A stretch of DNA of 64,000 nucleotides, from positions 286,090 to 350,089 of IMG/VR virus record IMGVR_UViG_3300003322_000571, one strand, 5' to 3'. Under the pieces are notes generated by a model. That model made no database searches. It was not told the DNA's origin and saw nothing but the letters and a program-made list of their open reading frames with translations. Position 1 is the stretch's first letter, and each line of letters begins with the position of its first letter. Of this stretch, positions 35,044 through 63,724 are shown piece by piece. Position numbers and translations under genes: made by a program.

Positions 35044-35116
35044 AGCGGGCAAAGAGACTCGAACTCTCGACATTCACCTTGGCAAGGTGATGCTCTACCA
35101 ACTGAGCTATACCCGC
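35044..35116 (-). tRNA. tRNA-Gly(GCC)
   Basis: full cloverleaf, loop TTGCCAA; no encoded CCA. Confidence 0.92.
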
Positions 35117-39481: not shown

Positions 39482-40053
39482 AAATCGTCATCACAGGTAA
39501 CATTGGTTGCGGTAAGTCAACAGCGACTCGCGTAATCCATAGGATGCTGCCTGATTACTATCTGTTTGATTTTGATCATGTCGTGGCTAGTTTATATAGC
39601 GACGAAATTGTCCGAATGCAGCTGATCAATGCGTTTGGTACAGCAGATAAAGGACAAATCAGTGATATTGTGCATGCTGATCAAAAAGCAATGTTAAAAT
39701 TGCGCAGTATTACTGATGCAGCTATTTTGACCGCAATTTACTCAGCGAATAAAAGGGTTGATGTTATTTTTGACATCCCTTTGTATTTTGAGTTCAATGA
39801 TCTAATGCGTCTTAACCCTGACGCAGTTATTTGTGTCACTGCTGACGAAGCCAGTCAGATTGAGCGCGTAAAGGCGCGCAGCGGATTCTCTGAGGAAAAG
39901 ATTCGGTCTATCATTGCAAAACAGCTTCCTCAAGACGAGAAAGTTGCCAGAAGTGATTACCTTCTGCATAATGATGCTCCTTCAGCAGAAGTATTTGAGC
40001 AGGATGTCGCTGAGTTTATTGTGTTTCACCAAAACTTTGGATTTTTACGATGA
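39478..40053 (+). CDS. coaE: dephospho-CoA kinase
   Basis: ITGNIGCGKS, DIPLYFE, QIER..AR.G, QLP..EK. Confidence 0.85.
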   Translation: MKIVITGNIGCGKSTATRVIHRMLPDYYLFDFDHVVASLYSDEIVRMQLINAFGTADKGQISDIVHADQKAMLKLRSITDAAILTAIYSANKRVDVIFDIPLYFEFNDLMRLNPDAVICVTADEASQIERVKARSGFSEEKIRSIIAKQLPQDEKVARSDYLLHNDAPSAEVFEQDVAEFIVFHQNFGFLR

Positions 40054-40577
40054 AAACAGGTGTGATTGCTGGATCGTTTGATCCAATTACGAATGGTCAT
40101 CTTGGCTTGATTCATCAGGCTATTATGGCTGTTGACAAACTTCATATTGTTGTTGGCCACAATCCAACGAAGAAGTACATGTTTACCAGTGAAGAACGTC
40201 AGAAACTGATTCAAGATGTTCTTTTTCACAAATATGGTGAAGTTGCCGCCAAGGACATCAAGGTTGTGATTGCTGAACACGAATTGCTCGTCAATTATGC
40301 AGCTCGTGTTGGGGCGAGGTATTTGATCCGTGGTATTCGTAACGGTGCTGATTATCAGTACGAAGCGGAAATGGAACGGATTAATAAGGATATCAATCCG
40401 AGCATTGAAACGATGTTCTTTATGCCGACTCCTCGTATGTCGCAAATTAGCTCGTCGTCAGTTAAGGGACTTGTTGATTTCGAAGGCGCTGAGTCAACTG
40501 TTAAGAAATATGTGCACTCGATCGTGTACAAAGCAATGAAAGAGAAGATCAAACATGAGCGACAATCAAAGCGATAA
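40050..40577 (+). CDS. coaD: phosphopantetheine adenylyltransferase
   Basis: GSFDPITNGH, IRGIR...DYQYE, ISSSSVK. Confidence 0.92.
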   Translation: MKTGVIAGSFDPITNGHLGLIHQAIMAVDKLHIVVGHNPTKKYMFTSEERQKLIQDVLFHKYGEVAAKDIKVVIAEHELLVNYAARVGARYLIRGIRNGADYQYEAEMERINKDINPSIETMFFMPTPRMSQISSSSVKGLVDFEGAESTVKKYVHSIVYKAMKEKIKHERQSKR

Positions 40578-41067
40578 TTCTTCGTGGAGTGACTACACGG
40601 TTTATCCTAATCATCTTCATGCTATGCATCGTCGCAGTGAGGAGATTCAGAAGGAGTCGTGGCTCAATCTCAAAACCGATCCGAAGGTACTCGACAAAAT
40701 CGAACGAGCTGTCGAACAATCTCGACCGATGTTCACTCGCGAAACTGACACAAAGTACAATGCAGAACACGCTCTTCGTGAACTGCCTGACTTCGGCACG
40801 ATTAAGGTGGTCAAGTTGACGCCTAACACGTTCAAGCTAATGGACTCTGCAGTGTCGTACTGGGTGTTCAATTCGTACGGTGTTGGGATTGACGTACCGA
40901 CAGGTATCAACATTCTGCACCTACCTAAAGGACTTCAAGACGTTGATCAGTACCTCGAAAGCGGTATGTTTAACAATGCTGTGATTTACGTTATTGGTCG
41001 TGCTGAAGATGTATTCCGGTTGCAGCAACGATTCCCTAACCTCGACATTACGTTGTTGTTCGTATGA
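40555..41067 (+). CDS. hypothetical protein
   Basis: 170 aa coupled ORF. Confidence 0.65.
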   Translation: MSDNQSDNSSWSDYTVYPNHLHAMHRRSEEIQKESWLNLKTDPKVLDKIERAVEQSRPMFTRETDTKYNAEHALRELPDFGTIKVVKLTPNTFKLMDSAVSYWVFNSYGVGIDVPTGINILHLPKGLQDVDQYLESGMFNNAVIYVIGRAEDVFRLQQRFPNLDITLLFV

Positions 41068-41267
41068 GTATCTGTAGTGCTCATCGCGTAGCGCGAGATG
41101 ACTGTCCTCAATGCCAGGCAACGATCTATGATTTGATTCCAAACTTCGATCAGTTGCTTGCAGAGGCGGAAGCGTCAGGAAAGACGACTTGCCATTGTGG
41201 GTTCACTTACTACAACACAACTCCCTCTTGCCCTAAGTGTTGCAGAGGTTCACCTAAAGTAGAATAA
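41064..41267 (+). CDS. small Cys-rich (zinc finger) protein
   Basis: CPQC, CHC, CPKC. Confidence 0.55.
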   Translation: MSICSAHRVARDDCPQCQATIYDLIPNFDQLLAEAEASGKTTCHCGFTYYNTTPSCPKCCRGSPKVE

Positions 41268-41269
41268 TT

Positions 41270-41745
41270 CTTTAGGTTAATTAGACAGCGAAGACTGTCC
41301 GCTGAAACAAACAGCGTATAACTAGAAACGTCAGGAGTGCATGTCCTAACTGCCTCCGGAGTGGGAACAGGTCGCGTGGAGCCGCGACAACGAGCCCGTG
41401 GTATGAAGTCCACAGAAGTTGACCCGCTTGGAAGAGATGCCCACTTGTCTACGACTAAACTTGTAATGTCCAGGTCGCGAGGTATCTTCCAAATCAGCTG
41501 CGTTAACGCGGGGCAGGGGATTGTGATTGATACGGCTTACCTACGCTAATGTGTATTTTGCAGATACAGTCTATCCTCTGTACTTCCGCTAGGTATTCCA
41601 TAATGCCGGCATGTGATGCTGAAGATGTAGCTTGAGTGCAAACGAAAGCTACATCTGATCCGTAGGTATATCCCGCTTCGTTGTTCTCCTTATTGGGTTT
41701 GCTTAATATATACCTCATGAACTGGATAGACCAGTTCGTCTCCAT
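41270..41745 (+). ncRNA. unassigned structured RNA / long 5' leader upstream of nadM-nudix
   Basis: ~470 nt without credible ORF; many helices; group I R/S-like motifs at 41448 and 41561. Confidence 0.5.
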
Positions 41746-41762
41746 CAATGAAAGGATCTTTC

Positions 41763-42803
41763 ATGTCTTACAAGTACGACTTCCTCGTATTCATCGGCCG
41801 TTTCGAGCCATTCCATGTTGGCCACCTCCAGGTCATTCAATCTGCACTAAACCAAGCACAGAACGTAATTGTTCTTGTTGGCAGCAGCAATCAACCTCGA
41901 ACAGAAAAGAATCCGTTCACGTACGATGAACGTGTATCGATGATTTACTGGTCTTTGGAGGACTTGAATCCTGACCTTTCAGGTCGTGTCGAGGTAGTTC
42001 CTCTTCGTGACCAGAAGTATAATGACCAGAAATGGGCAGTTAACGTCCAGTCGATTGTTGATCACCGCGTCAAGTTCGTAACCCAAGGTGTGCAACGCAG
42101 TGCACGAGTTGGCTTGATTGGCCACACCAAGGATGAAAGCTCGTATTACCTGAAGATGTTTCCGCAGTGGGATCTGGTGGAACACGAGATGAACGAGGAA
42201 ATCAACGCAACTGATCTTCGTCGCTTGATCTACGAAGGTAAGAGTTTGAAGTTCCTGCAAGGTGTCGTGCCTCCAGCAGTTCACAGTCTTATCGAATCGT
42301 TCGTCAAGACACCTGAGTATCAATTGCTTGTCTCTGAGTACGAGATGATCAAGAAGTACAAGAAAGCATGGGAAGTCGCGCCATATCCACCGATTTTCGT
42401 CACTACCGATGCAATCGTTGTTCAGTCTGGTCACGTGCTATTGGTCGAGCGAGGTGCTGCACCAGGTAAAGGATTGTGGGCGTTGCCGGGTGGTTTCTTG
42501 GAGCAGAACTTGACTGTTCAACAGAACATGATTAAGGAGCTGCGTGAGGAAACGAAGCTGAAAGTGCCTGAGCCAGTATTGATTGGTAATATCAGGCAGT
42601 GGCGTGTGTTTGATCGCCCTGATCGCAGTGCTCGTGGACGTACAGTGACGCACGCAGCTCACATTGAACTTCCTGCTGGACCTCTTCCCCTTGTTAAGGG
42701 AGGCGACGATGCAGCGAAAGCACGGTGGGTGCCAATCGCAGAACTGCGCGAAGATAATATGTTCGAGGATCACTGGCACATCTTGATGCACTTCCTTGGA
42801 TAA
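41763..42803 (+). CDS. nadM: bifunctional NMN adenylyltransferase / ADP-ribose pyrophosphatase (NadM-Nudix)
   Basis: IGRFEPFHVGH, Nudix box PGGFLE...RELREET, GGDDAAKARW, FEDH. Confidence 0.94.
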   Translation: MSYKYDFLVFIGRFEPFHVGHLQVIQSALNQAQNVIVLVGSSNQPRTEKNPFTYDERVSMIYWSLEDLNPDLSGRVEVVPLRDQKYNDQKWAVNVQSIVDHRVKFVTQGVQRSARVGLIGHTKDESSYYLKMFPQWDLVEHEMNEEINATDLRRLIYEGKSLKFLQGVVPPAVHSLIESFVKTPEYQLLVSEYEMIKKYKKAWEVAPYPPIFVTTDAIVVQSGHVLLVERGAAPGKGLWALPGGFLEQNLTVQQNMIKELREETKLKVPEPVLIGNIRQWRVFDRPDRSARGRTVTHAAHIELPAGPLPLVKGGDDAAKARWVPIAELREDNMFEDHWHILMHFLG

Positions 42804-42808
42804 CCAAC

Positions 42809-42836
42809 AAAGGGGCTGTATGCCCCTTTTCTTTTT
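42809..42836 (+). terminator. intrinsic terminator
   Basis: GGGGC-TGTAT-GCCCC-TTTT. Confidence 0.75.
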
Positions 42837-42892
42837 GCTTTACATTAAGGTTACGTTGTTGTAACATAGTGTTTTCAATTACGGAGCCTTAA

Positions 42893-43345
42893 ATGGACTA
42901 TTTGGTTGGTATTGCAATGGTTGTGATGTTGTTCATCGCATGTATTCACATCGTTGCACAACTCAGCTTGGAAGACAAAGCACAGCGATGGAATCCCGTT
43001 GCAGCCCGTTACCGCAGTGCTGGAATGCAATTGATTTGTTTCACAGCACTCGCGTTTGTTCTGTTCGGTAGCCGGATGTTCCTTCGTCCCGACGTGTCGA
43101 TTGCGTACAGTGACATTGAAATCGGCGTGTACAAAAATGTCACCCAAAATGACAAGTTGCAAGACGTAATCGAAACGAAGACAATCGCAGGTTGTCAGGT
43201 CACTTTGAAAAAGACGTATCCTTTGTTCGTCACCATTGGATCGGATACCAAAGAGATCAAGTACAAGCTCCCTTGTGATCGACTTGCACCTGAGATGAAG
43301 ACTGACATCGCAAGTGTCGTCAGCTATCTCAAAGAAGAGAAGTAA
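42893..43345 (+). CDS. hypothetical two-TM membrane protein
   Basis: GGAG RBS, two hydrophobic helices. Confidence 0.7.
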   Translation: MDYLVGIAMVVMLFIACIHIVAQLSLEDKAQRWNPVAARYRSAGMQLICFTALAFVLFGSRMFLRPDVSIAYSDIEIGVYKNVTQNDKLQDVIETKTIAGCQVTLKKTYPLFVTIGSDTKEIKYKLPCDRLAPEMKTDIASVVSYLKEEK

Positions 43346-43351
43346 TGATTG

Positions 43352-43381
43352 TTGACATGTTGAGGGTAACGCATATATAGT
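43352..43381 (+). promoter_or_regulatory. sigma70-type promoter
   Basis: TTGACA-18-TATAGT. Confidence 0.65.
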
Positions 43382-43452
43382 TCTCTCAATGTTGAACAAA
43401 GCGCTCTTAATTGAGCGCTGCTTTCAAATTAAGTTGGTCAATTTTACCCTTG

Positions 43453-43481
43453 TTGACTTAATTTGAAAGCAGTGATAAAGT
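43453..43481 (+). promoter_or_regulatory. sigma70-type promoter for large ncRNA
   Basis: TTGACT-17-TAAAGT. Confidence 0.6.
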
Positions 43482-43487
43482 TCACTC

Positions 43488-44425
43488 ATCGATTCAAACA
43501 ACGAAGTTAATTCAGCGATGTTTGATCAAAGCCAAGCTGTGAAGGGACTGGTTCGATTCCAGGTGTGAGTAACAGAAGCTCTATCAAGGACGGAGCGTCA
43601 TTGTTTGGTACGTTCTTTACAATTCAAGATTTGGGGCATAGCCCGGATAACTCCAGTGATGGAGCCAAAGCCTTAATGCTACATTATGGCGCCAGAAATG
43701 GTCAATCTATGCAAGCTCAGTTCTCTCCAGAAATGGAGGCTTCGTCGGGTTATCTGGCGGAGATAACTAGGAAATGAGTGTTGTGGAAAGAACACGAGGT
43801 CAAGTGCCACGCAAGTGGGAACACAACTGAGTGGAAAGCTGGGTGGTACCGGCTTCACAACAAACCAAACTCATCAGTAGGTAAGAACAAGAGTAGTGTC
43901 AATGTCCAAGCCGGCAAGCGAGGGCTATGATGCAGTTTGAGAGGTTAGTGGTGTGTGAAACATCATTGGTCTTGAAAAACAGTTGAGTAAGCGGCAGCTG
44001 AAAGACATGGAGGTGTGTTGTATTTTGGTGGTCAAAAGCCATCGAAGCAACTGGACGCACACATCTTCGTAGCGATTTCCGGTTAAAAACCGGGTAATTC
44101 ACGGTTTATGAATATCTTTAACGCAAAAGTTGCGTCCGGTGTTGTGTGAAAGTGGCTTAATTCTGTGGCAGCAATGTAACACAGACGTCTGAAGCTCGCA
44201 AGGCAGAGGATGTTGAAAGTGAGTCGCACGTTTGGCTAGGCATAGTCGAGCGGTAGACAAACTTCGAATAGCACAACGCGACGAGGTAACCGCCAACCTC
44301 TAAATAAGGCAGTCATGCAAGGTACTCTCATGAGAGAGTGGATAAGTGTAGAACCAATGGTGTAGCAGCCAAAGGATAATGACACAAAAGTCTTGTACCA
44401 ACCGATGTAATCTCAGTCGTTTGAC
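43488..44425 (+). ncRNA. large (~940 nt) ornate noncoding RNA (GOLLD/ROOL-like class candidate)
   Basis: no credible ORF between promoter and terminator; many short hairpins (GCAA, GAAA and ATGA loops) and a T-arm at 43548-43563. Confidence 0.7.
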
Positions 44426-44464
44426 CTAACCGAACAGCATTCTGTGTTGTTCGGTTAGTCTTTT
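44426..44464 (+). terminator. terminator closing large ncRNA
   Basis: CTAACCGAACAGCA/TGTTGTTCGGTTAG 14-bp stem then TCTTTT. Confidence 0.75.
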
Positions 44465-44476
44465 ACAGATACGTAT

Positions 44477-44767
44477 ATGAACTTCGACAACATCCGAAAG
44501 GCGTGGCGTCGAGCAAAAAGCTTCAAGCTGGTCGGCAGTGTACAATTCACACCGTACAATCCCGTTGGAGCTGAAATCGCAGCAGCTAACTACTGCTTGT
44601 TGATCGACGCTGAAGGCGATCTTGTTGATGACTTAGTCCTCTTCGATAGTTGGGCTCAAAGCATTAACCGTGCATGTGATGCACGAATGATCGTCGATAG
44701 TCCAGACATTCAACACTCTCTTCGGTGCTTTGCTTCAAGGCTCTGGGTTGATCCTGAACGTCTTTGA
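44477..44767 (+). CDS. hypothetical protein
   Basis: 96 aa ATG ORF. Confidence 0.55.
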   Translation: MNFDNIRKAWRRAKSFKLVGSVQFTPYNPVGAEIAAANYCLLIDAEGDLVDDLVLFDSWAQSINRACDARMIVDSPDIQHSLRCFASRLWVDPERL

Positions 44768-46778: not shown

Positions 46779-46855
46779 GCTCTCTTAGCTCAATTGGTTA
46801 GAGCGGCGGTCTCTAAAACCGACGGCTACGGGTTCGAATCCCGTAGAGGGCACCA
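46779..46855 (+). tRNA. amber suppressor tRNA (anticodon CTA)
   Basis: full cloverleaf, loop CT-CTA-AA, encoded ACCA. Confidence 0.88.
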
Positions 46856-55841: not shown

Positions 55842-55917
55842 GGTGACGTTAGTGTAGTGGTTCGCATTACTGTCTGTGAAACAGTAGGAACGGGTTCAAT
55901 CCCCGTACGTCACCCCA
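55842..55917 (+). tRNA. tRNA-His(GTG) with encoded G-1, C73, CCA
   Basis: cloverleaf; loop CTGTGAA. Confidence 0.92.
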
Positions 55918-55934
55918 ATGAACATTAGAATTAT

Positions 55935-56026
55935 GGAGGCATGGATGAGTGGTTTATATCGCTTCCCTGCTAAGGAAGAGCTCGGCGAAAGTCGGGCCGT
56001 GGGTTCGAATCCCACTGCCTCCTCCA
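55935..56026 (+). tRNA. tRNA-Ser(GCT)
   Basis: long variable arm, CCA. Confidence 0.92.
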
Positions 56027-56039
56027 ATGTGTGTAGTGT

Positions 56040-56111
56040 CAGGGTAGAAGGCGTTTGGTAGCCACTTAGCTTTGGAAGCTTTGAGTCTCAGTTCGATTCT
56101 GAGTATCCTGA
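56040..56111 (+). tRNA. tRNA-Pro(TGG)
   Basis: C1-G72, A73; weak anticodon stem; no CCA. Confidence 0.7.
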
Positions 56112-56129
56112 CAGTGCACATATTACAAT

Positions 56130-56203
56130 AGGGGAATGGTGTAGCGGTAACACAACTGGCTTTGACCCAGTCATCCCAGGTTCGAATCCTGGTTCCCTTG
56201 CCA
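56130..56203 (+). tRNA. tRNA-Gln(TTG)
   Basis: cloverleaf, CCA. Confidence 0.9.
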
Positions 56204-56213
56204 ACTGATTTCT

Positions 56214-56285
56214 AGGGAAGTAGTGTAGCGGCTATCACCTCTGGTTCTGACCCAGACAACACAGGTTCGAGTCCTGTCTTCCCTG
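56214..56285 (+). tRNA. tRNA-Gln(CTG)
   Basis: cloverleaf, no CCA. Confidence 0.88.
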
Positions 56286-56365
56286 CAGAGAAACATGCTT
56301 GCATGTAACGACCGAGTCAACGACATGAACTGTGCAGACGTAGTAGTGTTCTTGATTCATTCCTT

Positions 56366-56436
56366 ACTCACCGCCGTCGGAACGGTTCTGTGTCTACGAA
56401 ACACGGATTTGGAGGTTCGAATCCTCTCGGTGGGTC
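56366..56436 (+). tRNA. tRNA-Arg(ACG), atypical D arm
   Basis: loop CTACGAA, T arm; D arm GCCGT-CGGA-ACGGT. Confidence 0.6.
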
Positions 56437-56440
56437 AAAT

Positions 56441-56514
56441 GTCTCCATAGCTCAGCGGATTAGAGTAACACGCTACGAACGTGTTGGTCGGGGGTTCGAA
56501 TCCCTCTGGAGGCT
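56441..56514 (+). tRNA. tRNA-Arg(ACG)
   Basis: canonical cloverleaf. Confidence 0.92.
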
Positions 56515-56573
56515 CAAAAGAGTTGATATGTAAAAGGTTACAAAGTAAAGTTTACATATCAGTTTCCAAATCT

Positions 56574-56646
56574 GGTGCACTCGGCTCTCTGGGAGACCAC
56601 TTCACTGTCTATGAAGGCTAGACGGGTTCGATTCCCGTGTGCATCG
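56574..56646 (+). tRNA. tRNA-Asp(GTC)
   Basis: loop CTGTCTA, T arm. Confidence 0.75.
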
Positions 56647-56652
56647 CAAATG

Positions 56653-56829
56653 TGTGTTTAAGACTGTCGCACGCCAAAAGGCACAGTGGGTTAAGTCTTA
56701 CTTCATGTCTTTACTTGTTGGCGCAAGTATAACATGTTGTCCATTAGTACAGTGGTAGTACGTCGCCTATAACGGCGAAGACGCGGGTTCGATTCCCGTA
56801 TGGAATTTTTGACGACAGCCTTAAACACA
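56653..56829 (+). ncRNA. end-clamped RNA containing a tRNA-like domain (56740-56804)
   Basis: 17-bp terminal helix (1 mismatch); D, anticodon-like (6-nt loop) and T arms inside. Confidence 0.6.
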
Positions 56830-56830
56830 T

Positions 56831-56875
56831 GGTTCGTTAGCATAGTCTGGCTTAATGCGCTTGCCTGTCACGCAG
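56831..56875 (+). pseudogene. 5' fragment of tRNA-Asp(GTC) truncated by HNH cassette
   Basis: acceptor 5' strand, D arm, CTGTCAC loop; no T arm or 3' strand. Confidence 0.7.
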
Positions 56876-56913
56876 TTCGAAGGTGACAGTCATAAATATC
56901 GTCAGAGGTGTTT

Positions 56914-57330
56914 ATGGAAACAAAAGTGTGTTCGGCTTGTAAGGTTAACAAATCGTTGAGTGAGTACAACAAGTACAAGCGATCAAAGGATGGGTTAGAT
57001 TATCGTTGCAAATTGTGTCAGCGCAATTCAAACAAGAGTTGGGTTGAAAACAATTGGGAGCGTAAGCTAGCACAGCAAACTGATCGACGTTCTCAACTAC
57101 TGACACAGTTGAGAGAGTTCAAAAGAACTGCTGGTTGTAGATGCTGTCCTGAAACCGAGCCGGTGTGCTTGGAACTGCATCACCTTGATCCGAATGAGAA
57201 GGAAATTGATCCTTCAAGTATGGTAAGTCAAGGTTGGAGCTGGGAACGCATGAAGAGTGAAATTGATAAGTGTGTAGTCTTGTGTAGTAACTGTCACAAG
57301 AAAGTACATGCGGGATTGTTGGAAATTTAA
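56914..57330 (+). mobile_element. free-standing HNH homing endonuclease in tRNA array
   Basis: CSAC..CKLC, CRCC..LELHHLDP..KCVVLCSNCHKKVH; CATAAATA at 56891, AGAGG RBS. Confidence 0.85.
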
Positions 57331-57332
57331 TT

Positions 57333-57407
57333 GGTCTCAAGGTGTTCATGGACGCATACGGCACTGTCACTGCTGAGGAGGGGGATCGTTACCCCCTGGG
57401 ACCGCCA
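57333..57407 (+). tRNA. tRNA-Asp(GTC)
   Basis: cloverleaf, variant T loop ATCGTTA, CCA. Confidence 0.85.
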
Positions 57408-57410
57408 AAT

Positions 57411-57583
57411 GTCTTCTTAGTGTAAAGGCTCAATGCTAGCTGTTGAGGTTACGGAAATGAAAGACTACAATTAATCGGTTGTGAATCGGCCGATAACTCA
57501 TCCGCGAGATTGTAGGAGATAATCAACGTGATGCACCTCATTCCCTAAGAATGAATGAGATGGTTCGATTCCATCAGAAGACA
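57411..57583 (+). ncRNA. tRNA-shaped RNA with ~109-nt structured D-loop insertion
   Basis: acceptor GTCTTCT/AGAAGAC, D stem GTGT/GCAC, anticodon arm TCATT-CCCTAAG-AATGA, T arm. Confidence 0.7.
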
Positions 57584-57588
57584 CAAAT

Positions 57589-57670
57589 GTAGTTGCTGTC
57601 CTCGGAGAGACTTGCTCGCGAATACGCTTGCTGAAAAGTACCTGAGTAGGTTCGAATCCTACCAACTACA
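57589..57670 (+). pseudogene. degenerate tRNA-like element
   Basis: acceptor GTAGTTG/CAACTAC and T arm intact; anticodon arm unpaired. Confidence 0.55.
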
Positions 57671-57671
57671 C

Positions 57672-57829
57672 TAATACGTCAATGCGGTATGAACGCAAGC
57701 CGGATGGGAGGTCTACATTCGGTGTCAGACGCTGTCGAGAGAAAGTAGACGTTGACCTCGAAGCGCCCTCGGGGGCTGAGTCAGAGAGTTGGTGCAACAG
57801 GCTGCAATCTGCCAATCCAACACGTATTA
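57672..57829 (+). ncRNA. unassigned structured RNA
   Basis: TAATACGT/ACGTATTA closing helix with internal helices. Confidence 0.5.
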
Positions 57830-57834
57830 AATTT

Positions 57835-57916
57835 GGATCATTATACTCCTATGGACGGAGACCAGATTGTAATCCTGGTGCCTTTGGCTGGGTAGGTTCG
57901 ATTCCTACATGATCCA
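57835..57916 (+). tRNA. tRNA-Tyr(GTA)
   Basis: loop TTGTAAT, variable arm. Confidence 0.75.
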
Positions 57917-57926
57917 CTAAGATGTT

Positions 57927-58117
57927 ATATGTCGGCTCTTGAGACATCGCAACTCGTGAGAGATGCTATTAGCGTCGACATTAATTCCGGGACAACACGA
58001 TGGCGCGCTCAGTCATAACGTAAAACCGGAGCCTATCTGAGCAATAGGTAAAGTCTTCGATTGTACGGCAGGCTTCTATAATAGTGGCCAGGAACTCGAA
58101 GCCAAGAGCCGACATAT
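57927..58117 (+). ncRNA. unassigned ~190-nt RNA closed by a perfect 15-bp helix
   Basis: ATATGTCGGCTCTTG/CAAGAGCCGACATAT. Confidence 0.65.
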
Positions 58118-58124
58118 GACATCG

Positions 58125-58196
58125 GGGGAGGTCGTTTAGCGTTCAAGACACTGGCCACTAAAGCCAGCGACGATGGTTCGAATCCATCCCTCCCCA
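58125..58196 (+). tRNA. tRNA with CTA anticodon and non-canonical A33
   Basis: CTGGC-CACTAAA-GCCAG; full cloverleaf; no CCA. Confidence 0.65.
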
Positions 58197-58202
58197 CAAA
58201 TT

Positions 58203-58285
58203 GGATCGCGAGTGGCATTGGTGACTACAGCTGACTGTAAATCAGCCGCCTTCGGGCATACTAGGTTCGATTCCTAGGCGATCCA
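58203..58285 (+). tRNA. tRNA-Tyr(GTA)
   Basis: loop CTGTAAA, variable arm GCC-TTCG-GGC. Confidence 0.9.
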
Positions 58286-58419
58286 CAAAGTGATGGTCGG
58301 CGAGGTACGCTGTTCAGTCGATCATCGAAATTCCCTACAGGCGTACTGCAAAGGGATGCTTACCAAACTTGAGGCGGCGGAAGCACGACCTCGGAAACTA
58401 GAAGTAGTTTCCAACCTTT

Positions 58420-58503
58420 GTCCCGTGATGACTGCTGGTAACGGTCAGTAGCCTTTCAAGCTACCGCCTTTGTGCTGGGGTTCGATTCCCCCACGGGATA
58501 CCA
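58420..58503 (+). tRNA. tRNA-Glu(TTC) with enlarged variable region
   Basis: GTAGC-CTTTCAA-GCTAC, CCA. Confidence 0.75.
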
Positions 58504-58505
58504 AT

Positions 58506-58581
58506 GATGAGGTAGCTCAGAGAAAGAGTGCTGTCCCCGCAAGGGCAGAGGCCGGAGGTTAAAGTCCTTCTCTCATCTCCA
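58506..58581 (+). tRNA. tRNA-like, anticodon loop of 6 or 8 nt (identity unclear)
   Basis: acceptor, D arm, T loop TTAAAGT, CCA. Confidence 0.55.
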
Positions 58582-58582
58582 T

Positions 58583-58656
58583 GACGTGTTGGCCGATCGG
58601 TTAGGTGTGAAGCTGCAACCTTCACCAGGCAGGTTCGATTCCTGCACACGTCTCCA
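58583..58656 (+). tRNA. tRNA-Cys(GCA)
   Basis: U73, CCA, loop CTGCAAC. Confidence 0.92.
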
Positions 58657-58812
58657 AACTTGATTACGGAAAGTTTATCGTGAAGATGAAATGGAAAGTG
58701 CTGAAACGCATTAACAGCGGTAAATTGTTCGAGTATACGAGTTGGTGTTACGGTTCTGAATCAATCTGCTTCTGGAAGTGGGAGCTTGTGATTCATAACA
58801 GAAGGAAATAAC

Positions 58813-59037
58813 ATGAAGTTGGTTCTTGATCTAGATGATGATCAAATCAAAGCATTGATGGCATTGTCGGACACAACGGATCCAGCGGTTTTGACAAATG
58901 AAAGTTTGTCAATTTTGAAATGGATGATCAAGGAAACTATCAAAGGTCGCGCGATCGTATCGTGTGATTATGATGGTGGCGACTTGAAGCAGTTGAAAAC
59001 ACCTGTGCTGAATCGCACAAAGGCAAAGTTCAATTGA
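58813..59037 (+). CDS. hypothetical protein (RHH-like possible)
   Basis: AAGGA RBS, 74 aa. Confidence 0.6.
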   Translation: MKLVLDLDDDQIKALMALSDTTDPAVLTNESLSILKWMIKETIKGRAIVSCDYDGGDLKQLKTPVLNRTKAKFN

Positions 59038-59042
59038 ACAAT

Positions 59043-59114
59043 GCCCCCGTAGTTTAGTGGCTAGAACGACGCCCTTTCAAGGCGTAGAAGACGGATCGTA
59101 ACCGTTCGGGGGTA
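59043..59114 (+). tRNA. tRNA-Glu(TTC)
   Basis: cloverleaf, T loop ATCGTAA. Confidence 0.85.
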
Positions 59115-59120
59115 CATATT

Positions 59121-59192
59121 GGTAACGAGGCTGAATGGTTAAGCAGGAGTCTCATAAGCTCTGTGTCGTGGGTTCGATTCCCACTGTTACCA
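59121..59192 (+). tRNA. tRNA-Met/Ile2(CAT)
   Basis: loop CTCATAA. Confidence 0.85.
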
Positions 59193-59197
59193 CTAAT

Positions 59198-59270
59198 AGG
59201 TTGTTCGCGGGCCGCGGACTTGTAGTCTCCAAAACTCATAGGGACAGTTCGACTCTGTCACAGCCTGCCA
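59198..59270 (+). tRNA. tRNA-Trp(CCA)
   Basis: loop CTCCAAA, G73, CCA; short D arm. Confidence 0.75.
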
Positions 59271-59272
59271 TT

Positions 59273-59345
59273 CCCCTCCTAGCTAATCTGGTGAGAGCGA
59301 CCGTTTGAAACGCAGTAGAGACTGGTTCGATTCCAGTGGTGGGGA
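59273..59345 (+). tRNA. tRNA-Phe(GAA)
   Basis: loop TTGAAAC; mismatches in stems. Confidence 0.7.
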
Positions 59346-59348
59346 CAT

Positions 59349-59819
59349 ATGAATCCAAGATACAGTAAGCAACGTCGCGCAACCACGTGTGGACCAACTG
59401 CTGTGATCAATGCGATGAAGTGGAAGGATCCACGGATTTCGTACACAAAAATAATTGACAAGGTTGCGAAACAGTGTAAACAGCAGAAAGATGGAAGCAG
59501 TTACACTAATATTGCTTCAGCGTGCCGTGCTAACGGGTTCAAAGCGTTTATTCGCAGGTATCCATCGATTGATTTTATTCGCCAGCAATTGTTGAAAGGA
59601 AAGTCAATCATTTTGTTGTACAGACATCCAAAAGACTTTTGGCCTGAATATAACCATTTTGTATTCATTCCTGAGTACAATAAAGAGTTTACAGTAGTCA
59701 ACGGTCATGTGTATGACAACCTTGAAGAAGAACGAGAGACGGTTGTGATGTATGACGATCATACGTTCAACAATAGAATATCAAAGAGACAACGTCACGC
59801 TGTGATTGTGTTGTCGTAA
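59349..59819 (+). CDS. C39-like cysteine peptidase
   Basis: Q..TTCGPTAVINA, NHFV, N. Confidence 0.7.
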   Translation: MNPRYSKQRRATTCGPTAVINAMKWKDPRISYTKIIDKVAKQCKQQKDGSSYTNIASACRANGFKAFIRRYPSIDFIRQQLLKGKSIILLYRHPKDFWPEYNHFVFIPEYNKEFTVVNGHVYDNLEEERETVVMYDDHTFNNRISKRQRHAVIVLS

Positions 59820-59821
59820 CT

Positions 59822-59894
59822 GCCGCTTAAGCTAATCTGGTGAAAGCGCTAGTTTGAAACACTAGAGAGACAGGCTCGAAACCTGTAGGCGGCA
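59822..59894 (+). tRNA. tRNA-Phe(GAA)
   Basis: CTAGT-TTGAAAC-ACTAG. Confidence 0.85.
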
Positions 59895-59907
59895 CAAAGG
59901 AATAAGT

Positions 59908-60090
59908 ATGAACACATTACTTGCTTGGAGTCATTTTGCAATTGGCGACTTTTTCTGTCGTTTATTGTCCCTAAATGACGATAACGAAAAATGGGTGAAT
60001 ATGTTCTTCGGCTTGTATCAATATCATATGAGTCGGAGTGTTGAAATCCAAGATCAGTTTGGCTTAGCTGGACCTTGGGATCCTAAATAA
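59908..60090 (+). CDS. hypothetical protein
   Basis: AAGGA RBS, 60 aa. Confidence 0.5.
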   Translation: MNTLLAWSHFAIGDFFCRLLSLNDDNEKWVNMFFGLYQYHMSRSVEIQDQFGLAGPWDPK

Positions 60091-60108
60091 GGCAACGGAG
60101 GTTGTCTT

Positions 60109-60267
60109 ATGAAGATCAAAGAGCTAATTCGTGAGTTTGTCGAACAACGCAACGGTAAGTGGGTAGTGCTTGATCACACCAAGAAAAAGGTGTTGGGAAC
60201 GCATGATACCAAAGACGAAGCGGACAGGCAGCTTGCAGCTATTGAGATCAATAAGCACAAACACTAA
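60109..60267 (+). CDS. small hypothetical protein (MKIKELIREF...)
   Basis: GGAGG RBS, TAAATA at 60084; 52 aa. Confidence 0.6.
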   Translation: MKIKELIREFVEQRNGKWVVLDHTKKKVLGTHDTKDEADRQLAAIEINKHKH

Positions 60268-60347
60268 CCCTTCGTGGCAAATGTAAATTGGTACAGCTAC
60301 TACGTTCAGACCGTAGGCTTTTGTCGGTTCGAATCCGACCGAAGGGA
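60268..60347 (+). tRNA. tRNA-Leu(CAG)
   Basis: CTACG-TTCAGAC-CGTAG. Confidence 0.88.
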
Positions 60348-60352
60348 CAAAG

Positions 60353-60604
60353 ATGAGTAAGGCTTCAGAAATTGAGCGAACACTTCACTGTTTGATCGAC
60401 ACACTCGAAAAGCTAGATCCAAAAGGTGATCCACTCGCTTGTAATTATGCAAAGATGCTGATCGATAAGTCGCACGACTATATGCTCGATGTGATTGCAG
60501 ATTTGGATGATGAGACTGAAGAAGGTAAGCAAGTTGCTGTGGTGATTGATCGTTACCGTAAAACGATCATGTTGCTTGACTCTTACGACAAATGTGAAGT
60601 ATGA
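60353..60604 (+). CDS. hypothetical protein
   Basis: 83 aa. Confidence 0.55.
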   Translation: MSKASEIERTLHCLIDTLEKLDPKGDPLACNYAKMLIDKSHDYMLDVIADLDDETEEGKQVAVVIDRYRKTIMLLDSYDKCEV

Positions 60605-60849
60605 TTTACGTAGATAAGCCAACGTGGAAGAAACCAAACGGACGAAAGTATTTCGCTCATATGGTTGCTGACACTGTTGAAGAGTTACATCAGTTCGCTG
60701 AACTGATTGGTGTGAAGAAACATTTCTTCCATCGCGGTGATAAACCTCACTACGACATCAGTGTGGATCAGCATGCTGCGGCGATAGCAAACGGTGCTGT
60801 CGAAGTTAGTACCAAACAGATCGTTGCGGTAATAACGCAACGGAAGTAA
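60601..60849 (+). CDS. DUF4031-like protein
   Basis: IYVD, HMVADT.EELHQFA..IG, PHYDI. Confidence 0.75.
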   Translation: MIYVDKPTWKKPNGRKYFAHMVADTVEELHQFAELIGVKKHFFHRGDKPHYDISVDQHAAAIANGAVEVSTKQIVAVITQRK

Positions 60850-60932
60850 AGTCTAAAAAAGAAAACGTCATCCAGAACGATATCTGGCTGCTCGAACGGC
60901 AACGGTGAGAGCGTAAGGTGACAGTTGTACAA

Positions 60933-61006
60933 GCGGCCATGGTGTTGAAGGGTTAGCACGAGACCTTGCCAAGGTTTAGGTCCGAGTTCGAATCTCGGTG
61001 GCCGCT
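60933..61006 (+). tRNA. tRNA-Gly(GCC)
   Basis: AGACC-TTGCCAA-GGTTT, U73. Confidence 0.88.
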
Positions 61007-61310
61007 CAGACAGGTTCTCACCCGTTGCTGGGGAGGGTCGGTACGATGGATTGTTCTGCGATACGTACCAACAGACTTCGCGCATTCAAGAGTAAGCGAA
61101 CATGAGGAATGCTGGAACCTGACCAAGATCCCCCACACTTGGAAATGTGTTGACGCGTTCAGTCTATAAAACACTGAACTGGTTGAGACGGATAACCACT
61201 AACTGAAACCGTCTTCGTTTGAGTTTTAGTTCCATATTGGCGGTACGGAAGTCGCTGGTTATGCTGGTAGGTAAAGCTACAAGTTTGTGTAGGATGCACA
61301 GGCGGTCAAT

Positions 61311-61398
61311 GCGGAAGTGATGGAATTGGTAGTCTTGCCATGTTGAGCGCGTGGTGTCCGCTAAGGGCGTGTGGGTTCGAATCCCATCTTCCGCACCA
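61311..61398 (+). tRNA. tRNA-Leu(GAG)
   Basis: long variable arm, CCA. Confidence 0.85.
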
Positions 61399-61412
61399 AT
61401 TAGGAGATGCAA

Positions 61413-61577
61413 ATGGGCAGCAAGTACACTGTCAAGTCTTGGGGCCAACATAATGGACCTGAAGATGTATATTCTTGGAATCAAGAATGGGCGGGTAGGT
61501 CCTTGTGGCAAGCTCTGATCCAAACTTGGCGTGCAAAACGTCGCGGCTTTGGGTGTGTGGTTCTAGAGATTCGCTGA
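61413..61577 (+). CDS. small hypothetical protein
   Basis: AGGAG RBS, 54 aa. Confidence 0.5.
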   Translation: MGSKYTVKSWGQHNGPEDVYSWNQEWAGRSLWQALIQTWRAKRRGFGCVVLEIR

Positions 61578-61580
61578 GAT

Positions 61581-61757
61581 ATGAGAAGTACACCAGTACC
61601 AGCAGGTAACATTAAGCTCCGTGGTAAGAAAACACGGCCGCTGTCATGTATGTGTTGTGTTGCAGTGAACTTCAAAGACATGATTCGTGAGAAAGAAGCG
61701 GACCGTGAGATCAAAAACTTCAAGGAAGGGAAAGACGATGGGACCGACCGGATTTGA
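61581..61757 (+). CDS. small basic hypothetical protein (CMCC)
   Basis: 58 aa coupled ORF. Confidence 0.45.
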   Translation: MRSTPVPAGNIKLRGKKTRPLSCMCCVAVNFKDMIREKEADREIKNFKEGKDDGTDRI

Positions 61758-61949
61758 AGCTGAATACCTCGGTGAAGTTCAGTGGGATACTACAGCAAAA
61801 GTGTTCTTCTCGGTAGTTACCGTAATTACATTAACGTTGCTGGTAATTCTTCTTTTGACGTAAGATGCGACCGACAAACTTCACGATTTATACGTTGTTG
61901 ACAGTCTCAGTACTCCTCACACTGATAACAATTGTAGTTTAAACACCTT

Positions 61950-62033
61950 GCCCAGGTGGCGGAATTGGTAGACGCGTAACATTGAGGGTGTTATGTCCGA
62001 AAGGACGTGCAGGTTCGAGTCCTGTCTTGGGCA
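61950..62033 (+). tRNA. tRNA-Leu(GAG)
   Basis: canonical type II cloverleaf. Confidence 0.9.
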
Positions 62034-62120
62034 CAAACGCAAGTGCATGCTGGCTAAAACAGTAGCACAGAAACTGAGTGATGACGACATCAGTTGCAAG
62101 AGATGTGAGCTCTCTACAAT

Positions 62121-62201
62121 GCCCGAGTGGTGTAATGGTAGCCACAGGAGACTCAAAATCTCCCGCCTCACAGCGTGTCGGTTCGAATCCGACCTCGGGT
62201 A
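62121..62201 (+). tRNA. tRNA-Leu(CAA)
   Basis: GGAGA-CTCAAAA-TCTCC. Confidence 0.9.
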
Positions 62202-62355
62202 CAAAGTAACGGTTCAGTGTTAGCGCATTGGACATACCAGTCTGGCCAGACGGATGATATGTACGGCCGTACGTTGAGTCTTATTTGTGAATTGGTTCTT
62301 GCGTTCGAATCGCAGGTCACAATAGGTAACGTTACTAACATATTAGGAAAAGTAG

Positions 62356-62907
62356 ATGCGAGTTAAAATTGGTCCATATCTGACGTGGTGGGGTCCTTAC
62401 CAAATTGCAGATCTGCTCCAATACGTAGGCGTATCAGAAGATCGATGCCAGAAAATTGGTCGTTGGTTGTCTAATACTCGATTGAATGATCTGTGTCAAT
62501 GGATTTACGACAAGCGACAACGAACAATCAAGGTCAAGATTGATTATCACGATGTGTTTTCTGCTGATTACACACTTGCGTTGATCATTCTCCCAGTGTT
62601 GAAGCAGTACCGTGAAAAGTTAAACGGGTCACCGTGGACAGATGATCAAGATGTACCTGATCATCTGCGTTCAACAAACGCACCACCGTTCAACCCAGAA
62701 AATGGTGAAACAGACGAACTATTTCACCAGCGATGGGAATGGATGGTTGACGAAATGATCTGGGCGTTCGAACAGATCATTGACGATGATAATGATGCTC
62801 AATTTCATGTCAATGGTTACGATCACGAATCACACATGAAACATGAACAACGTATCAAGAATGGTACGACACTGTTCGGCAAATACTATCGTGGTATTTG
62901 GCTGTAA
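62356..62907 (+). CDS. conserved phage hypothetical protein
   Basis: 183 aa; W.W.VDEMIWAFE motif. Confidence 0.75.
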   Translation: MRVKIGPYLTWWGPYQIADLLQYVGVSEDRCQKIGRWLSNTRLNDLCQWIYDKRQRTIKVKIDYHDVFSADYTLALIILPVLKQYREKLNGSPWTDDQDVPDHLRSTNAPPFNPENGETDELFHQRWEWMVDEMIWAFEQIIDDDNDAQFHVNGYDHESHMKHEQRIKNGTTLFGKYYRGIWL

Positions 62908-62913
62908 CAAAAT

Positions 62914-62999
62914 GGAGAGGCAGGCCGTGATGTATGTACGGCACCAGCAGGAACAGCTGGCGTCTCTGACTAACGGTGGTTAAATTCCATCACTCTCCA
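62914..62999 (+). pseudogene. degenerate tRNA-like element
   Basis: acceptor, D arm, CCAGC-AGGAACA-GCTGG, T loop TTAAATT. Confidence 0.5.
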
Positions 63000-63042
63000 C
63001 TAAAACAATGAGATAAATAGTGTACACCAAGGAGCACTGTTT

Positions 63043-63378
63043 ATGTTGTTGTCGGAACTGTATCAAGAGCACAAGGGAAGTTCGTTCACCCATGATGGTG
63101 AAAAGTATGACCTTAATAAAGTGTTGAAGGCAGTTGATAAAGATCCTGAGGAAGAATTTGATGTCGATGAACTTAAATGGGTTCTCGATTATGATTCTCC
63201 TGACGATAAACGTGTACGCAAAGCAGACCTAACCACACCAATCTTGGTAACAAGATGGGAAGGAAAACTAGTTGCTATTGATGGTCTTCATCGCCTACAA
63301 AAGGCGGTCGACGAGGGTAGGAAGAAGTTGCCTGGTAAGATGGTTTCGAAGAAAGTATTGAACAGCGCAAAGAAATAA
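63043..63378 (+). CDS. ParB/Srx N-terminal-like protein
   Basis: PILV....LVAIDGLHRL. Confidence 0.7.
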   Translation: MLLSELYQEHKGSSFTHDGEKYDLNKVLKAVDKDPEEEFDVDELKWVLDYDSPDDKRVRKADLTTPILVTRWEGKLVAIDGLHRLQKAVDEGRKKLPGKMVSKKVLNSAKK

Positions 63379-63384
63379 TGAATT

Positions 63385-63464: not shown

Positions 63465-63477
63465 CAAAGGTTAAACA

Positions 63478-63717: not shown

Positions 63718-63724
63718 AATTAAT

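What the first reader, a model, noticed from the sequence alone, without database searches (positions are those of the whole stretch)
41270..41745. ~470-nt pseudoknotted RNA with group I intron R/S-like core upstream of nadM-nudix
Seen: there is no credible ORF. TCTACGACTA (41448-57) and CAGATACAGTCTA (41561-73) resemble group I R and S elements and pair as a P7-like helix with a bulged C next to a G-C pair. Crossing helices AGTGGG/CCCACT (41360/41440) and TTGGAAGA/TCTTCCAA (41428/41485) form a pseudoknot. There is an 11-bp stem at 41623/41646 and an 8-bp stem at 41664/41708. I could not place a canonical P4-P6 domain, P1 splice site or interrupted gene. Inference: a rearranged group I-like ribozyme, or a large riboswitch-like leader for the NAD enzyme.
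Basis: partly seen in the sequence, partly recalled or inferred. Interest (0 to 1): 0.7.

Follow-up and report, generated by a model that had tools for sequence, protein, structure and literature searches.

The report
New pseudoknotted RNA family in jumbo phages
The gene-free stretch upstream of the NAD-salvage gene encodes a real, strongly conserved, roughly 400-nt folded RNA of a family not found in Rfam. It occurs in two copies per genome in a small group of soil jumbo phages, is neither a group I intron nor a riboswitch, and has no known function.

Summary

**What it is**
- Window 41284 to about 41677 (+) belongs to a family of about 30 unique sequences, found only in viral and metagenomic contigs.
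- A second, 73%-identical copy lies 77 kb away on the other strand of the same 350-kb phage genome.
- No member matches any Rfam 15 family.

**Evidence for structure**
- Over 29 members, 96.8% of cells in 24 modelled pairs are paired (71.0% in shuffles).
- 19 of the 24 pairs show compensatory changes.
- G·U cells outnumber A·C cells 18 to 2, so the + strand is the functional one.

- The TTGGAAGA/TCTTCCAA pseudoknot is conserved in 23 of 23 members tested.
- The 11-bp stem is a family-wide hairpin.
- The R-like and S-like elements lie in a variable linker and a copy-specific insert.
- AGTGGG/CCCACT is displaced by a covarying alternative helix.

**Why not a riboswitch**
- 41681–41762 is not part of the RNA. 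It holds a conserved σ70-type promoter, a small leader hairpin and the ribosome-binding site of the NMNAT-NUDIX gene.
- Most copies follow a RuvC-like gene and have no downstream gene.

**Best reading:** a stand-alone, doubly pseudoknotted phage RNA, comparable in kind to GOLLD and ROOL, which lie nearby. Its function is unknown and no expression data exist.

The parts
41284..41299 (+). P0 hairpin (GACAG/CUGUC), found only in the NMNAT-proximal 'type A' copies
   Evidence: Read by eye from the sequences printed: the hairpin sits at the same place with different stem sequences in L071 (CCAC/GUGG), L110 (GCCU/AGGC) and L147 (GGCCAC/GUGGCC). No formal pair count was made.
41300..41316 (+). P1 hairpin CGCUG/CAGCG with conserved loop AAACAAA
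   Evidence: Compensatory changes (GCUG/CAGC, ACUG/CAGU, GUUG/CAAC, GUUA/UAAC) in the MAFFT alignment (pairs 7-20, 8-19 and 9-18 with 5, 2 and 1 double changes).
41317..41331 (+). J1/2, the nearly invariant single-stranded block AUAACUAGAAACG
   Evidence: Invariant or >=90% columns in A2 and A4. Retained even in the most divergent members.
41332..41359 (+). P2 (41332-37 with 41354-59, conserved mismatch at position 2). Its loop carries UCCU (41344-47), the 5' arm of pseudoknot PK2.
   Evidence: Top-ranked stack in the unbiased scan. In A11 its inner pairs show 4-5 standard pair types each, with 7-11 sequences changed on both sides.
41360..41397 (+). P3 (GGG 41363-65 with CCC 41395-97) enclosing AACAG, hairpin P3a (41371-76/41383-88) and AACGAG
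   Evidence: The outer P3 pair has GC, AU, GU, UA and UG. All six P3a pairs have compensatory changes and 98-100% of cells are paired.
41398..41413 (+). P4 hairpin GUGG/CCAC
   Evidence: Variants GCGG/CCGC and UGGC/GCCA in other members. The MAFFT register there is poor, so the count is only 75% paired.
41416..41446 (+). P5 (AAGU 41416-19/ACUU 41443-46), the 2-bp P5a (41426-27/41439-40) and a loop carrying UUGGAAGA (41428-35), the 5' arm of pseudoknot PK1
   Evidence: P5a shows GC, CG and AU at its first pair. The PK1 core is present in 23 of 23 members.
41447..41458 (+).
   Evidence: Columns here are mixed or gapped in A5, and the stretch is unalignable with the paralogue.
41459..41475 (+). 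P6 hairpin ACUUG/CAGGU
   Evidence: All four modelled pairs have compensatory changes. Third-ranked stack in the unbiased scan.
41476..41502 (+). P7 (CGC-[G bulge]-AG 41476-81 with CU-GCG 41498-502). Its loop holds UCUUCCAA (41485-92), the 3' arm of PK1.
   Evidence: The third pair is C-G in 13, U-A in 13 and U.G in 1 of 29 members. The other pairs are invariant or nearly so.
41503..41513 (+). J7/8 (UUAAC) and the nearly invariant GCGGGG. GGGG 41510-13 is the proposed 3' arm of PK2.
   Evidence: RNAalifold selects CCCU/GGGG. 98% of cells are paired but almost invariant. L137 keeps pairing by a register shift (CCGC/GCGG, read).
41516..41675 (+). P8 (GGGAU 41517-21 with AUCCC 41670-74).
   Evidence: In other members P8 is a short local hairpin GGGA..UCCC. 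The insert is absent from the paralogue.
41623..41656 (+).
   Evidence: A comparable long hairpin, with an unrelated stem and a loop of the type GAGUGAAGCGAA, is seen in most members examined.
41681..41709 (+). Not part of the RNA: σ70-type promoter of the NMNAT-NUDIX gene (TTGTTC, 17 nt, TAATAT)
   Evidence: TTGNNN-17-TACTAT (TAATAT in the window) at a fixed 42-43 nt before the leader hairpin loop in all five type-A copies. The scanner calls it in L152. The TATATAC motif occurs only once in the 64-kb window.
41719..41737 (+). Not part of the RNA: leader hairpin P10 (GAACUGG/CCAGUUC, loop AUAGA) of the NMNAT-NUDIX mRNA
   Evidence: The stem differs in sequence across type-A copies and L154. 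The hairpin is also present upstream of the gene in the RNA-less genome G008.
41752..42803 (+). Ribosome-binding site AAGGA (41752-56) and the NMNAT-NUDIX (NadM-like) gene, ATG at 41763
   Evidence: Pfam CTP_transf_like 9e-14 and NUDIX 2.5e-18.

Best explanation
Window 41284 to about 41677 (+) encodes a stand-alone, highly structured non-coding RNA. It belongs to a family that is not in Rfam.

**Fold**
- The conserved core of about 230 nt runs from P1 to P8.
- Two long-range pairings close it into a compact fold. The loop of P5 pairs with the loop of P7 (PK1). The loop of P2 pairs with the invariant GGGG that follows P7 (PK2).
- Nearly invariant purine-rich junctions (AUAACUAGAAACG, GGAACAG, AACGAG, GAGGU, UCAG) surround these helices.
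- A long hairpin with a conserved loop (P9) and variable 3' modules follow the core.

**Genomic setting**
- The phage keeps two diverged copies. One follows its RuvC-like resolvase gene. The other sits in the stable-RNA neighbourhood, just upstream of the NMNAT-NUDIX promoter and near GOLLD and the tRNAs.

**Inferred, not shown**
- The RNA is made by read-through from the upstream gene, because no conserved σ70-type promoter precedes it.
- It acts in trans through its folded core, as a binding scaffold or a catalyst, like the large ornate phage RNAs GOLLD and ROOL. It is not a cis-regulator.
For: **A real family**
- A paralogue exists in the same genome.
- About 30 unique members were found in viral and metagenomic contigs.

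**Structure**
- On a structure-blind MAFFT alignment, 16 of 24 RNAalifold pairs carry double changes, and the top stacks of an all-against-all scan are P2, P3a and P6.
- On 29 members, 96.8% of cells are paired against 71.0% in shuffles. 19 of 24 pairs are compensatory. Covariation is 0.522 against 0.137 (0 of 500 shuffles) and at most 0.105 for slid partners.
- Strand: 18 G.U cells against 2 A.C cells.

**Not coding:**

**Not a known family**
- No Rfam hit for the window region at E<=10, nor for 11 other loci.

**Not a leader**
- A conserved promoter lies between the RNA and the NMNAT gene.
- Type-B copies face a convergent gene.
- RNA-less relatives keep NMNAT-NUDIX, and one keeps the leader hairpin.

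**Context:** the order RNA, NMNAT-NUDIX, GOLLD, tRNAs is syntenic in three genomes.
Against: - No transcript evidence of any kind. The only 'RNA' run holds a 64-nt match from a relative and is flagged as probably DNA.
- No promoter or defined ends for the RNA.
- PK1 and PK2 are conserved but lack compensatory changes.
- The alignments behind searches were fitted to the model, and members are phylogenetically related, so the shuffle control overstates significance.
- The trans-acting, scaffold-or-catalyst role is inference from size, complexity and neighbourhood only.
- The family is dispensable: related jumbo phages, including one complete 363-kb genome, lack it.
Confidence: 0.6

Rival explanations
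1. A processing or stability element of the upstream mRNA. This could be a self-cleaving ribozyme, or a 3'-UTR structure that defines the 3' end of the RuvC message (type B) or of the small-ORF operon (type A).
For: - Type-B copies begin 10-45 nt after the RuvC stop codon on the same strand.
- No independent σ70-type promoter was found.
- In several members P9 is followed by a U-rich tract, and in L071 P8 is called terminator-like.
- The size and the conserved junctions would be compatible with catalysis.
Against: - A doubly pseudoknotted core of about 230 nt is far larger than any known self-cleaving motif.
- RuvC homologues 44-52% identical have no such element.
- No known self-cleaving ribozyme family matched in Rfam.
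Confidence: 0.15
2. A giant riboswitch-like or protein-responsive leader that controls the NMNAT-NUDIX gene.
For: - Five type-A copies and L154 lie directly upstream of the gene.
- L154 has the order RuvC, RNA, NMNAT, which may be ancestral.
Against: - A conserved, fixed-register promoter lies between the RNA and the gene.
- At least 20 unique copies have no downstream co-directional gene.
- The gene exists without the RNA in G008 and G009.
- No match to the Rfam NAD+ riboswitch models.
Confidence: 0.06
3. A rearranged group I-like ribozyme.
For: The strand order of PK1 and P7 (5' arm, P7 5' strand, 3' arm, P7 3' strand) resembles the P3-P7 pseudoknot of group I introns, and P7 has a bulged base next to conserved C-G/G-C pairs. 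The comparison with group I topology rests on established knowledge, not on a tool result.
Against: - No Intron_gpI hit.
- The R-like and S-like strings are not conserved.
- There is no P8 between the PK1 3' arm and the P7 3' strand, and no P4-P6 domain.
- No interrupted gene or exon junction.
Confidence: 0.02
4. An RNA partner of the adjacent RuvC-like protein, forming a ribonucleoprotein in the way ωRNAs sit next to TnpB or IscB.
For: Same-strand adjacency to a RuvC-fold gene in most members.
Against: - The protein is a 159-aa ordinary resolvase-type RuvC (PF02075) with no extra domains.
- Type-A copies and the L145 group are not next to RuvC.
- RuvC homologues commonly lack the RNA.
- The complex prediction was not run by the tool, so it gives no evidence either way.
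Confidence: 0.04
5. A DNA-level single-strand structure, for example a priming or replication signal, rather than an RNA.
For: - Two inverted copies 77 kb apart.
- GCGAAGC-type mini-hairpin motifs recur in and after P9. Such motifs are known from phage single-strand origins; that point rests on my own knowledge.
Against: - The complexity of the fold, two pseudoknots and conserved junctions, is typical of RNA.
- The element is co-directional with flanking genes in every locus.
- G.U-type wobble is frequent.
Confidence: 0.04

Closest known systems
GOLLD RNA (RF02032) and ROOL RNA: large ornate phage/prophage RNAs
   Same: - Phage-encoded, several hundred nucleotides, multiple pseudoknots, conserved junctions, modular with variable regions, function unknown.
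- Located near tRNA islands. GOLLD and ROOL are described this way in PMC12286853.
- Here the type-A copy lies 2.3 kb from a bona fide GOLLD (207 bits), with tRNAs nearby.
   Different: - No sequence or structure match to either model.
- Smaller: about 330-400 nt, against about 600-800+ nt.
- Two paralogous copies per genome.
- Oligomerisation is untested. The palindromic AUGCCGGCAU motif in the 3' region is not palindromic in all members.
Group I intron catalytic core (P3-P7 pseudoknot)
   Same: The crossing topology of PK1 and P7, and a bulged nucleotide in P7.
   Different: No P4-P6, no P8, no P1 or splice sites, no interrupted gene and no Rfam match.
NAD+ riboswitches (nadA and pnuC motifs) and other large riboswitch aptamers
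   Same: Some copies lie upstream of an NAD-metabolism gene, and the pseudoknotted core is conserved.
   Different: - A promoter separates the RNA from the gene.
- Most copies have no downstream gene.
- The core is several times larger than the known NAD+ aptamers (a comparison from my own knowledge).
- No Rfam match.
ωRNA of TnpB/IscB (OMEGA systems)
   Same: A structured, pseudoknotted RNA immediately downstream of, and co-directional with, a RuvC-fold gene.
   Different: - The protein is a minimal Holliday-junction-resolvase-type RuvC, not a TnpB/IscB nuclease of about 400 aa.
- No transposon ends or guide region were identified.
- The RNA also occurs away from any RuvC gene.

Membership tests
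Group I intron | Match to the Rfam Intron_gpI covariance model | tested here: not met
   No hit in 41000-44600 at E<=10 with permissive filters, nor in 11 other member loci.
Group I intron | Conserved P7 guanosine-binding helix formed by the R and S elements | tested here: not met
   The proposed R (41448-57) lies in a variable linker and the proposed S (41561-73) in a copy-specific insert.
Group I intron | P4-P6 domain and P1 with a splice site, with an interrupted host gene | tested here: not met
   No such domain appears in the consensus structure. The flanking RuvC and NMNAT-NUDIX genes are intact.
Group I intron | GTP-dependent self-splicing | not testable with these tools
   Needs in-vitro transcription and a splicing assay.
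GOLLD / ROOL | Match to the family covariance model | tested here: not met
   No hit in the region, while the true GOLLD at 44008-44419 scores 207 bits in the same search.
GOLLD / ROOL | Homo-oligomeric assembly | not testable with these tools
   Needs native gel, SEC-MALS or cryo-EM.
Riboswitch / cis-regulatory leader | Lies within the 5' UTR of the regulated gene | tested here: not met
   A conserved σ70-type promoter lies between the RNA and the gene in all five type-A copies. Type-B copies have no downstream gene.
Riboswitch / cis-regulatory leader | Ligand-dependent structural change | not testable with these tools
   Needs in-line probing or ITC.
ωRNA (OMEGA) | Association with a TnpB/IscB/IsrB-type nuclease | tested here: not met
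   The neighbour is a 159-aa protein matching only Pfam RuvC (PF02075). The association is not universal.
Conserved structured RNA (general) | Compensatory base changes that preserve helices across homologues | tested here: met
   19 of 24 pairs, with 96.8% of cells paired against 71.0% in shuffles. Also seen on structure-blind alignments.
Conserved structured RNA (general) | Transcribed | tested here: inconclusive
   No informative RNA library holds it. The strand is inferred from the G.U/A.C asymmetry.

The most novel reading that the evidence does not exclude
This is a new class of large functional RNA, either a ribozyme or a self-assembling RNA-only particle. Jumbo phages would keep it in two copies and deploy it alongside their tRNA, tmRNA and GOLLD repertoire. 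The doubly pseudoknotted core with invariant purine junctions would be an active site or an assembly interface.
Probability: 0.15. Interest if true: 0.85.

Novelty: new variant of a known kind. Interest (0 to 1): 0.6.

Why it matters
Large RNAs with intricate, covariation-supported folds are rare. Those that have been characterised have mostly turned out to be ribozymes, ribonucleoprotein scaffolds or, as shown recently for GOLLD, ROOL and OLE, RNA-only assemblies.

A further unrelated family sits next to GOLLD and a tRNA island in uncultured soil jumbo phages and is duplicated within each genome. This suggests that these phages carry a wider set of complex RNAs than is currently catalogued.

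At 330-400 nt, with a well-defined core, the family is a tractable target for structure determination and for biochemical screens. The result also corrects the annotation of the region: the NMNAT-NUDIX gene has its own promoter and a small conserved leader hairpin.

Tried and rejected
- **Similarity searches against deposited phage genomes.** Nucleotide searches found nothing. At protein level the RuvC neighbour has no relative above 40% identity.
- **Pattern GGGAACAG..AACGAGCC.** It was too loose and gave mostly chance hits.
- **Window-based best-helix test with a cross-sequence control.** Too much register slack made it uninformative.
- **mafft-qinsi.** Not installed.
- **RNAalifold on plain MAFFT alignments.** It missed P2 until the alignment was started at P2 and cut before GCGGGG.
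- **Cellular genomes.** Three pattern hits, all chance.
- **Expression.** No usable RNA run.
- **TATATAC as a phage-wide promoter motif.** Rejected, because it occurs only once in the window. It is the -10 region of the NMNAT promoter.
- **Anti-Shine-Dalgarno reading of the UGUUGNUUUCC tail.** Rejected in favour of the -35 element.
- **Conserved protein upstream of type-A copies.** None found.
- **A σ70 promoter for the RNA itself.** None conserved.
- **RuvC-RNA complex prediction.** The tool did not fold it, so there is no evidence either way.
- **RNase P RNA, considered from memory.** Rejected: the GAAGUCC..ACAGAA resemblance lies in a variable hairpin (P4) and no Rfam family matched.
- **Literature.** No description was found. 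The supplementary tables of the IMG/VR structured-RNA survey (PMC10690425) are not held. The family could therefore be among its roughly 10,000 unnamed candidates.

Full report
**Setting.** The window is the last 64 kb of a 350,089-bp virus record with direct terminal repeats. It comes from root, rhizosphere and soil metagenomes. An Rfam scan of the window finds a GOLLD RNA at 44008-44419 (207 bits), a tmRNA at 18448-18817 on the minus strand, and about 20 tRNAs. Nothing in 41270-41745 reaches any Rfam threshold, even at E<=10 with permissive filters. The region is flanked by a 67-aa ORF ending at 41267 and by an NMNAT-NUDIX (NadM-like) gene. That gene's true start is the ATG at 41763, read. 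Folding energy alone is unremarkable on either strand (z -2.6 and -2.8).

**The element is a family.** The genome holds a second copy, 73% identical over the core. It lies 77 kb away on the other strand, also in a gene-free gap. Aligning the two copies shows long identical blocks separated by hairpins of unrelated sequence. Patterns drawn from these blocks, an nhmmer profile and then a covariance model recovered about 30 unique members. All come from IMG/VR and metagenome contigs. A pattern scan of 185,579 species-representative cellular genomes gave three hits, and all were chance. No member matches an Rfam family. Literature searches found no description. The supplementary tables of the IMG/VR structured-RNA survey are not held, so an unnamed prior listing cannot be excluded.

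**Structure.** On a structure-blind MAFFT alignment, an all-against-all scan for stacked covarying columns ranks P2, P3a and P6 first. RNAalifold on a MAFFT alignment finds 24 pairs, 16 of them with double changes. With 29 members aligned to the resulting model:
- 96.8% of cells are paired, against 71.0% in shuffles.
- 19 of 24 pairs carry compensatory changes.
- The covariation score is 0.522, against 0.137 in shuffles (0 of 500 reach it) and at most 0.105 for slid partners.

That alignment is fitted to the model and the members are related, so these controls are generous. The MAFFT-only results agree with them. G.U cells outnumber A.C cells 18 to 2. The functional strand is therefore the + strand, co-directional with the neighbouring genes.

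**Pseudoknots.** Two long-range pairings cross the nested helices.
- PK1 joins the P5 loop (UUGGGAG) to the P7 loop (CUUCCAA). Its 6-bp core is present in 23 of 23 members, including the distant L145 group. It shows only pair-preserving one-sided changes.
- PK2 joins the P2 loop (CCCU) to the invariant GGGG after P7. RNAalifold selects it, and 98% of cells are paired, but it is almost invariant.

Both pseudoknots are therefore conserved and plausible, but not proven.

- The no-ORF claim holds. The window's 70-aa frame has stop codons in every homologue.
- TTGGAAGA/TCTTCCAA is PK1.
- The 11-bp stem is P9. Most members examined have a long, near-perfect hairpin in that position, with an unrelated stem and a conserved loop of the type GAGUGAAGCGAA.
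- The R-like string lies in the variable P5-P6 linker, and the S-like string in a 150-nt insert unique to this copy.
- AGTGGG/CCCACT is paired in 62% of cells without covariation. Its outer G covaries instead with the base after AACGAG (P3).
- The 8-bp stem uses the -10 region of a promoter as one arm.

**Modularity.** Divergent members keep the 5' half (P1, AAUAGAAACG, P2 with the ACCCU loop, GGAACA, CUUGGGAG) but replace the P6-P7-GCGGGG module. The L145, L146 and L155 variants keep the P6-P7-GCGGGG module and PK1 with a different 5' part. In L145 the element sits next to a tyrosine integrase.

**Context.** Type-B copies are the majority. They follow a RuvC-like resolvase gene (PF02075) on the same strand and face a small conserved ORF and a T4-type baseplate gene. 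Type-A copies (window, L071, L110, L147, L152) precede the NMNAT-NUDIX gene. The order RNA, NMNAT-NUDIX, small genes, GOLLD, tRNAs is syntenic. L154 has RuvC, RNA and NMNAT in one locus.

The associations are not obligatory.
- Many RuvC homologues have a gene directly after the stop codon.
- Five related large records with RuvC 44-52% identical have no copy at all. One of them is a complete 363-kb genome.
- Two of those records still carry NMNAT-NUDIX, and two carry GOLLD.

**The 3' quarter of the finding is not RNA.** All five type-A copies have TTGNNN, exactly 17 nt, then TACTAT (TAATAT in the window). This lies at a fixed 42-43 nt upstream of a small hairpin with loop AUAGA, which is followed by the ribosome-binding site. 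The scanner independently calls the promoter in L152. The same hairpin precedes the gene in the RNA-less genome G008. The window layout is therefore:
- RNA: 41284 to about 41677.
- Promoter: 41681-41709.
- Leader hairpin: 41719-41737.
- RBS: 41752-56.
- ATG: 41763.

This layout, together with the type-B context, argues against a riboswitch-like leader.

**What could not be shown.**
- Transcription. The single 'RNA' run holds a 64-nt identical stretch inside a contig from a copy-B-like relative, and the tool flags it as probably DNA.
- The ends of the RNA and its promoter. No conserved σ70-type site precedes P1.
- Any activity, partner or oligomeric state. The RuvC-RNA complex job was not folded by the tool.

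**Verdict.** This is a real structured RNA of a family not previously catalogued in Rfam. It is doubly pseudoknotted, modular and present in two copies per genome in a narrow clade of uncultured jumbo phages. It is not a group I intron and not the NMNAT leader. The most likely mode of action is as a stand-alone folded RNA acting in trans, comparable in kind to GOLLD and ROOL (PMC12286853). That step is inference.

Noticed in passing
window 44008-44419 (+), terminator-like hairpin 44426-44458: A bona fide GOLLD RNA (RF02032, 207 bits, full model length), followed by a 15-bp terminator-like hairpin. The same GOLLD is syntenic in L071 and L127/L135.
   Followed up: partly
window 18448-18817 (-): A phage-encoded tmRNA. 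It matches both the betaproteobacterial model (126 bits) and the permuted tmRNA model (112 bits).
   Followed up: no
window 55843-64000 (+), plus 35044-35116 (-) and 46779-46852 (+): About 20 tRNA genes, mostly in a dense island at the end of the window. One is cut by the window end.
   Followed up: no
window 43352-43381 and 43416-43474: The best σ70-like promoter of the region (TTGACA, 18 nt, TATAGT; 11 of 12). It is followed by a near-perfect 19-bp palindromic hairpin that matches a microRNA model on both strands. Both lie about 550 nt upstream of GOLLD and may be a regulatory or boundary element for it.
   Followed up: no
window 41719-41737; L315:1430-1450; type-A loci: A small hairpin with the conserved loop AUAGA between G-G and C-C pairs. 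It precedes the NMNAT-NUDIX ribosome-binding site in all type-A loci, in L154, and in the RNA-less phage G008. It is a candidate cis-regulatory or protein-binding element of that mRNA in its own right.
   Followed up: partly
window 40050-40577 (+): A second cytidylyltransferase-like gene (PF01467, 1.2e-17), 1.2 kb upstream of the NMNAT-NUDIX gene.
   Followed up: no
L145:1193-1884, L146, L155: A distant variant of the RNA within about 740 nt of non-coding DNA. It keeps P6, P7, GCGGGG and PK1 but has a different 5' half. In L145 it is directly upstream of a tyrosine integrase in what looks like a temperate element.
   Followed up: partly
L144:1670-1795: At least six tandem copies of a 17-nt unit (GAAATATCCCAGTTCTC) immediately downstream of that locus's copy of the RNA.
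   Followed up: no
P9 loop and the segment after P9 in many members (e.g. L002, L130, L145, L177, L190): GCGAAGC-type mini-hairpin motifs recur, as does a conserved UGCGAAGC after P9. Several members also carry a conserved motif AUGCCGGCAUGG in the 3' region (window 41600-41613). It is palindromic in some members but not all.
   Followed up: partly
window 41405, 41555, 41583, 41733 against 41052-41207: Near-identical strains in other soil and rhizosphere runs show 3 substitutions and 1 insertion in the covered parts of the RNA and leader. One of them (41733 A>G) keeps the leader hairpin paired as G.U. Six substitutions fall in the roughly 160 nt spanning 41052-41207 upstream.
   Followed up: no
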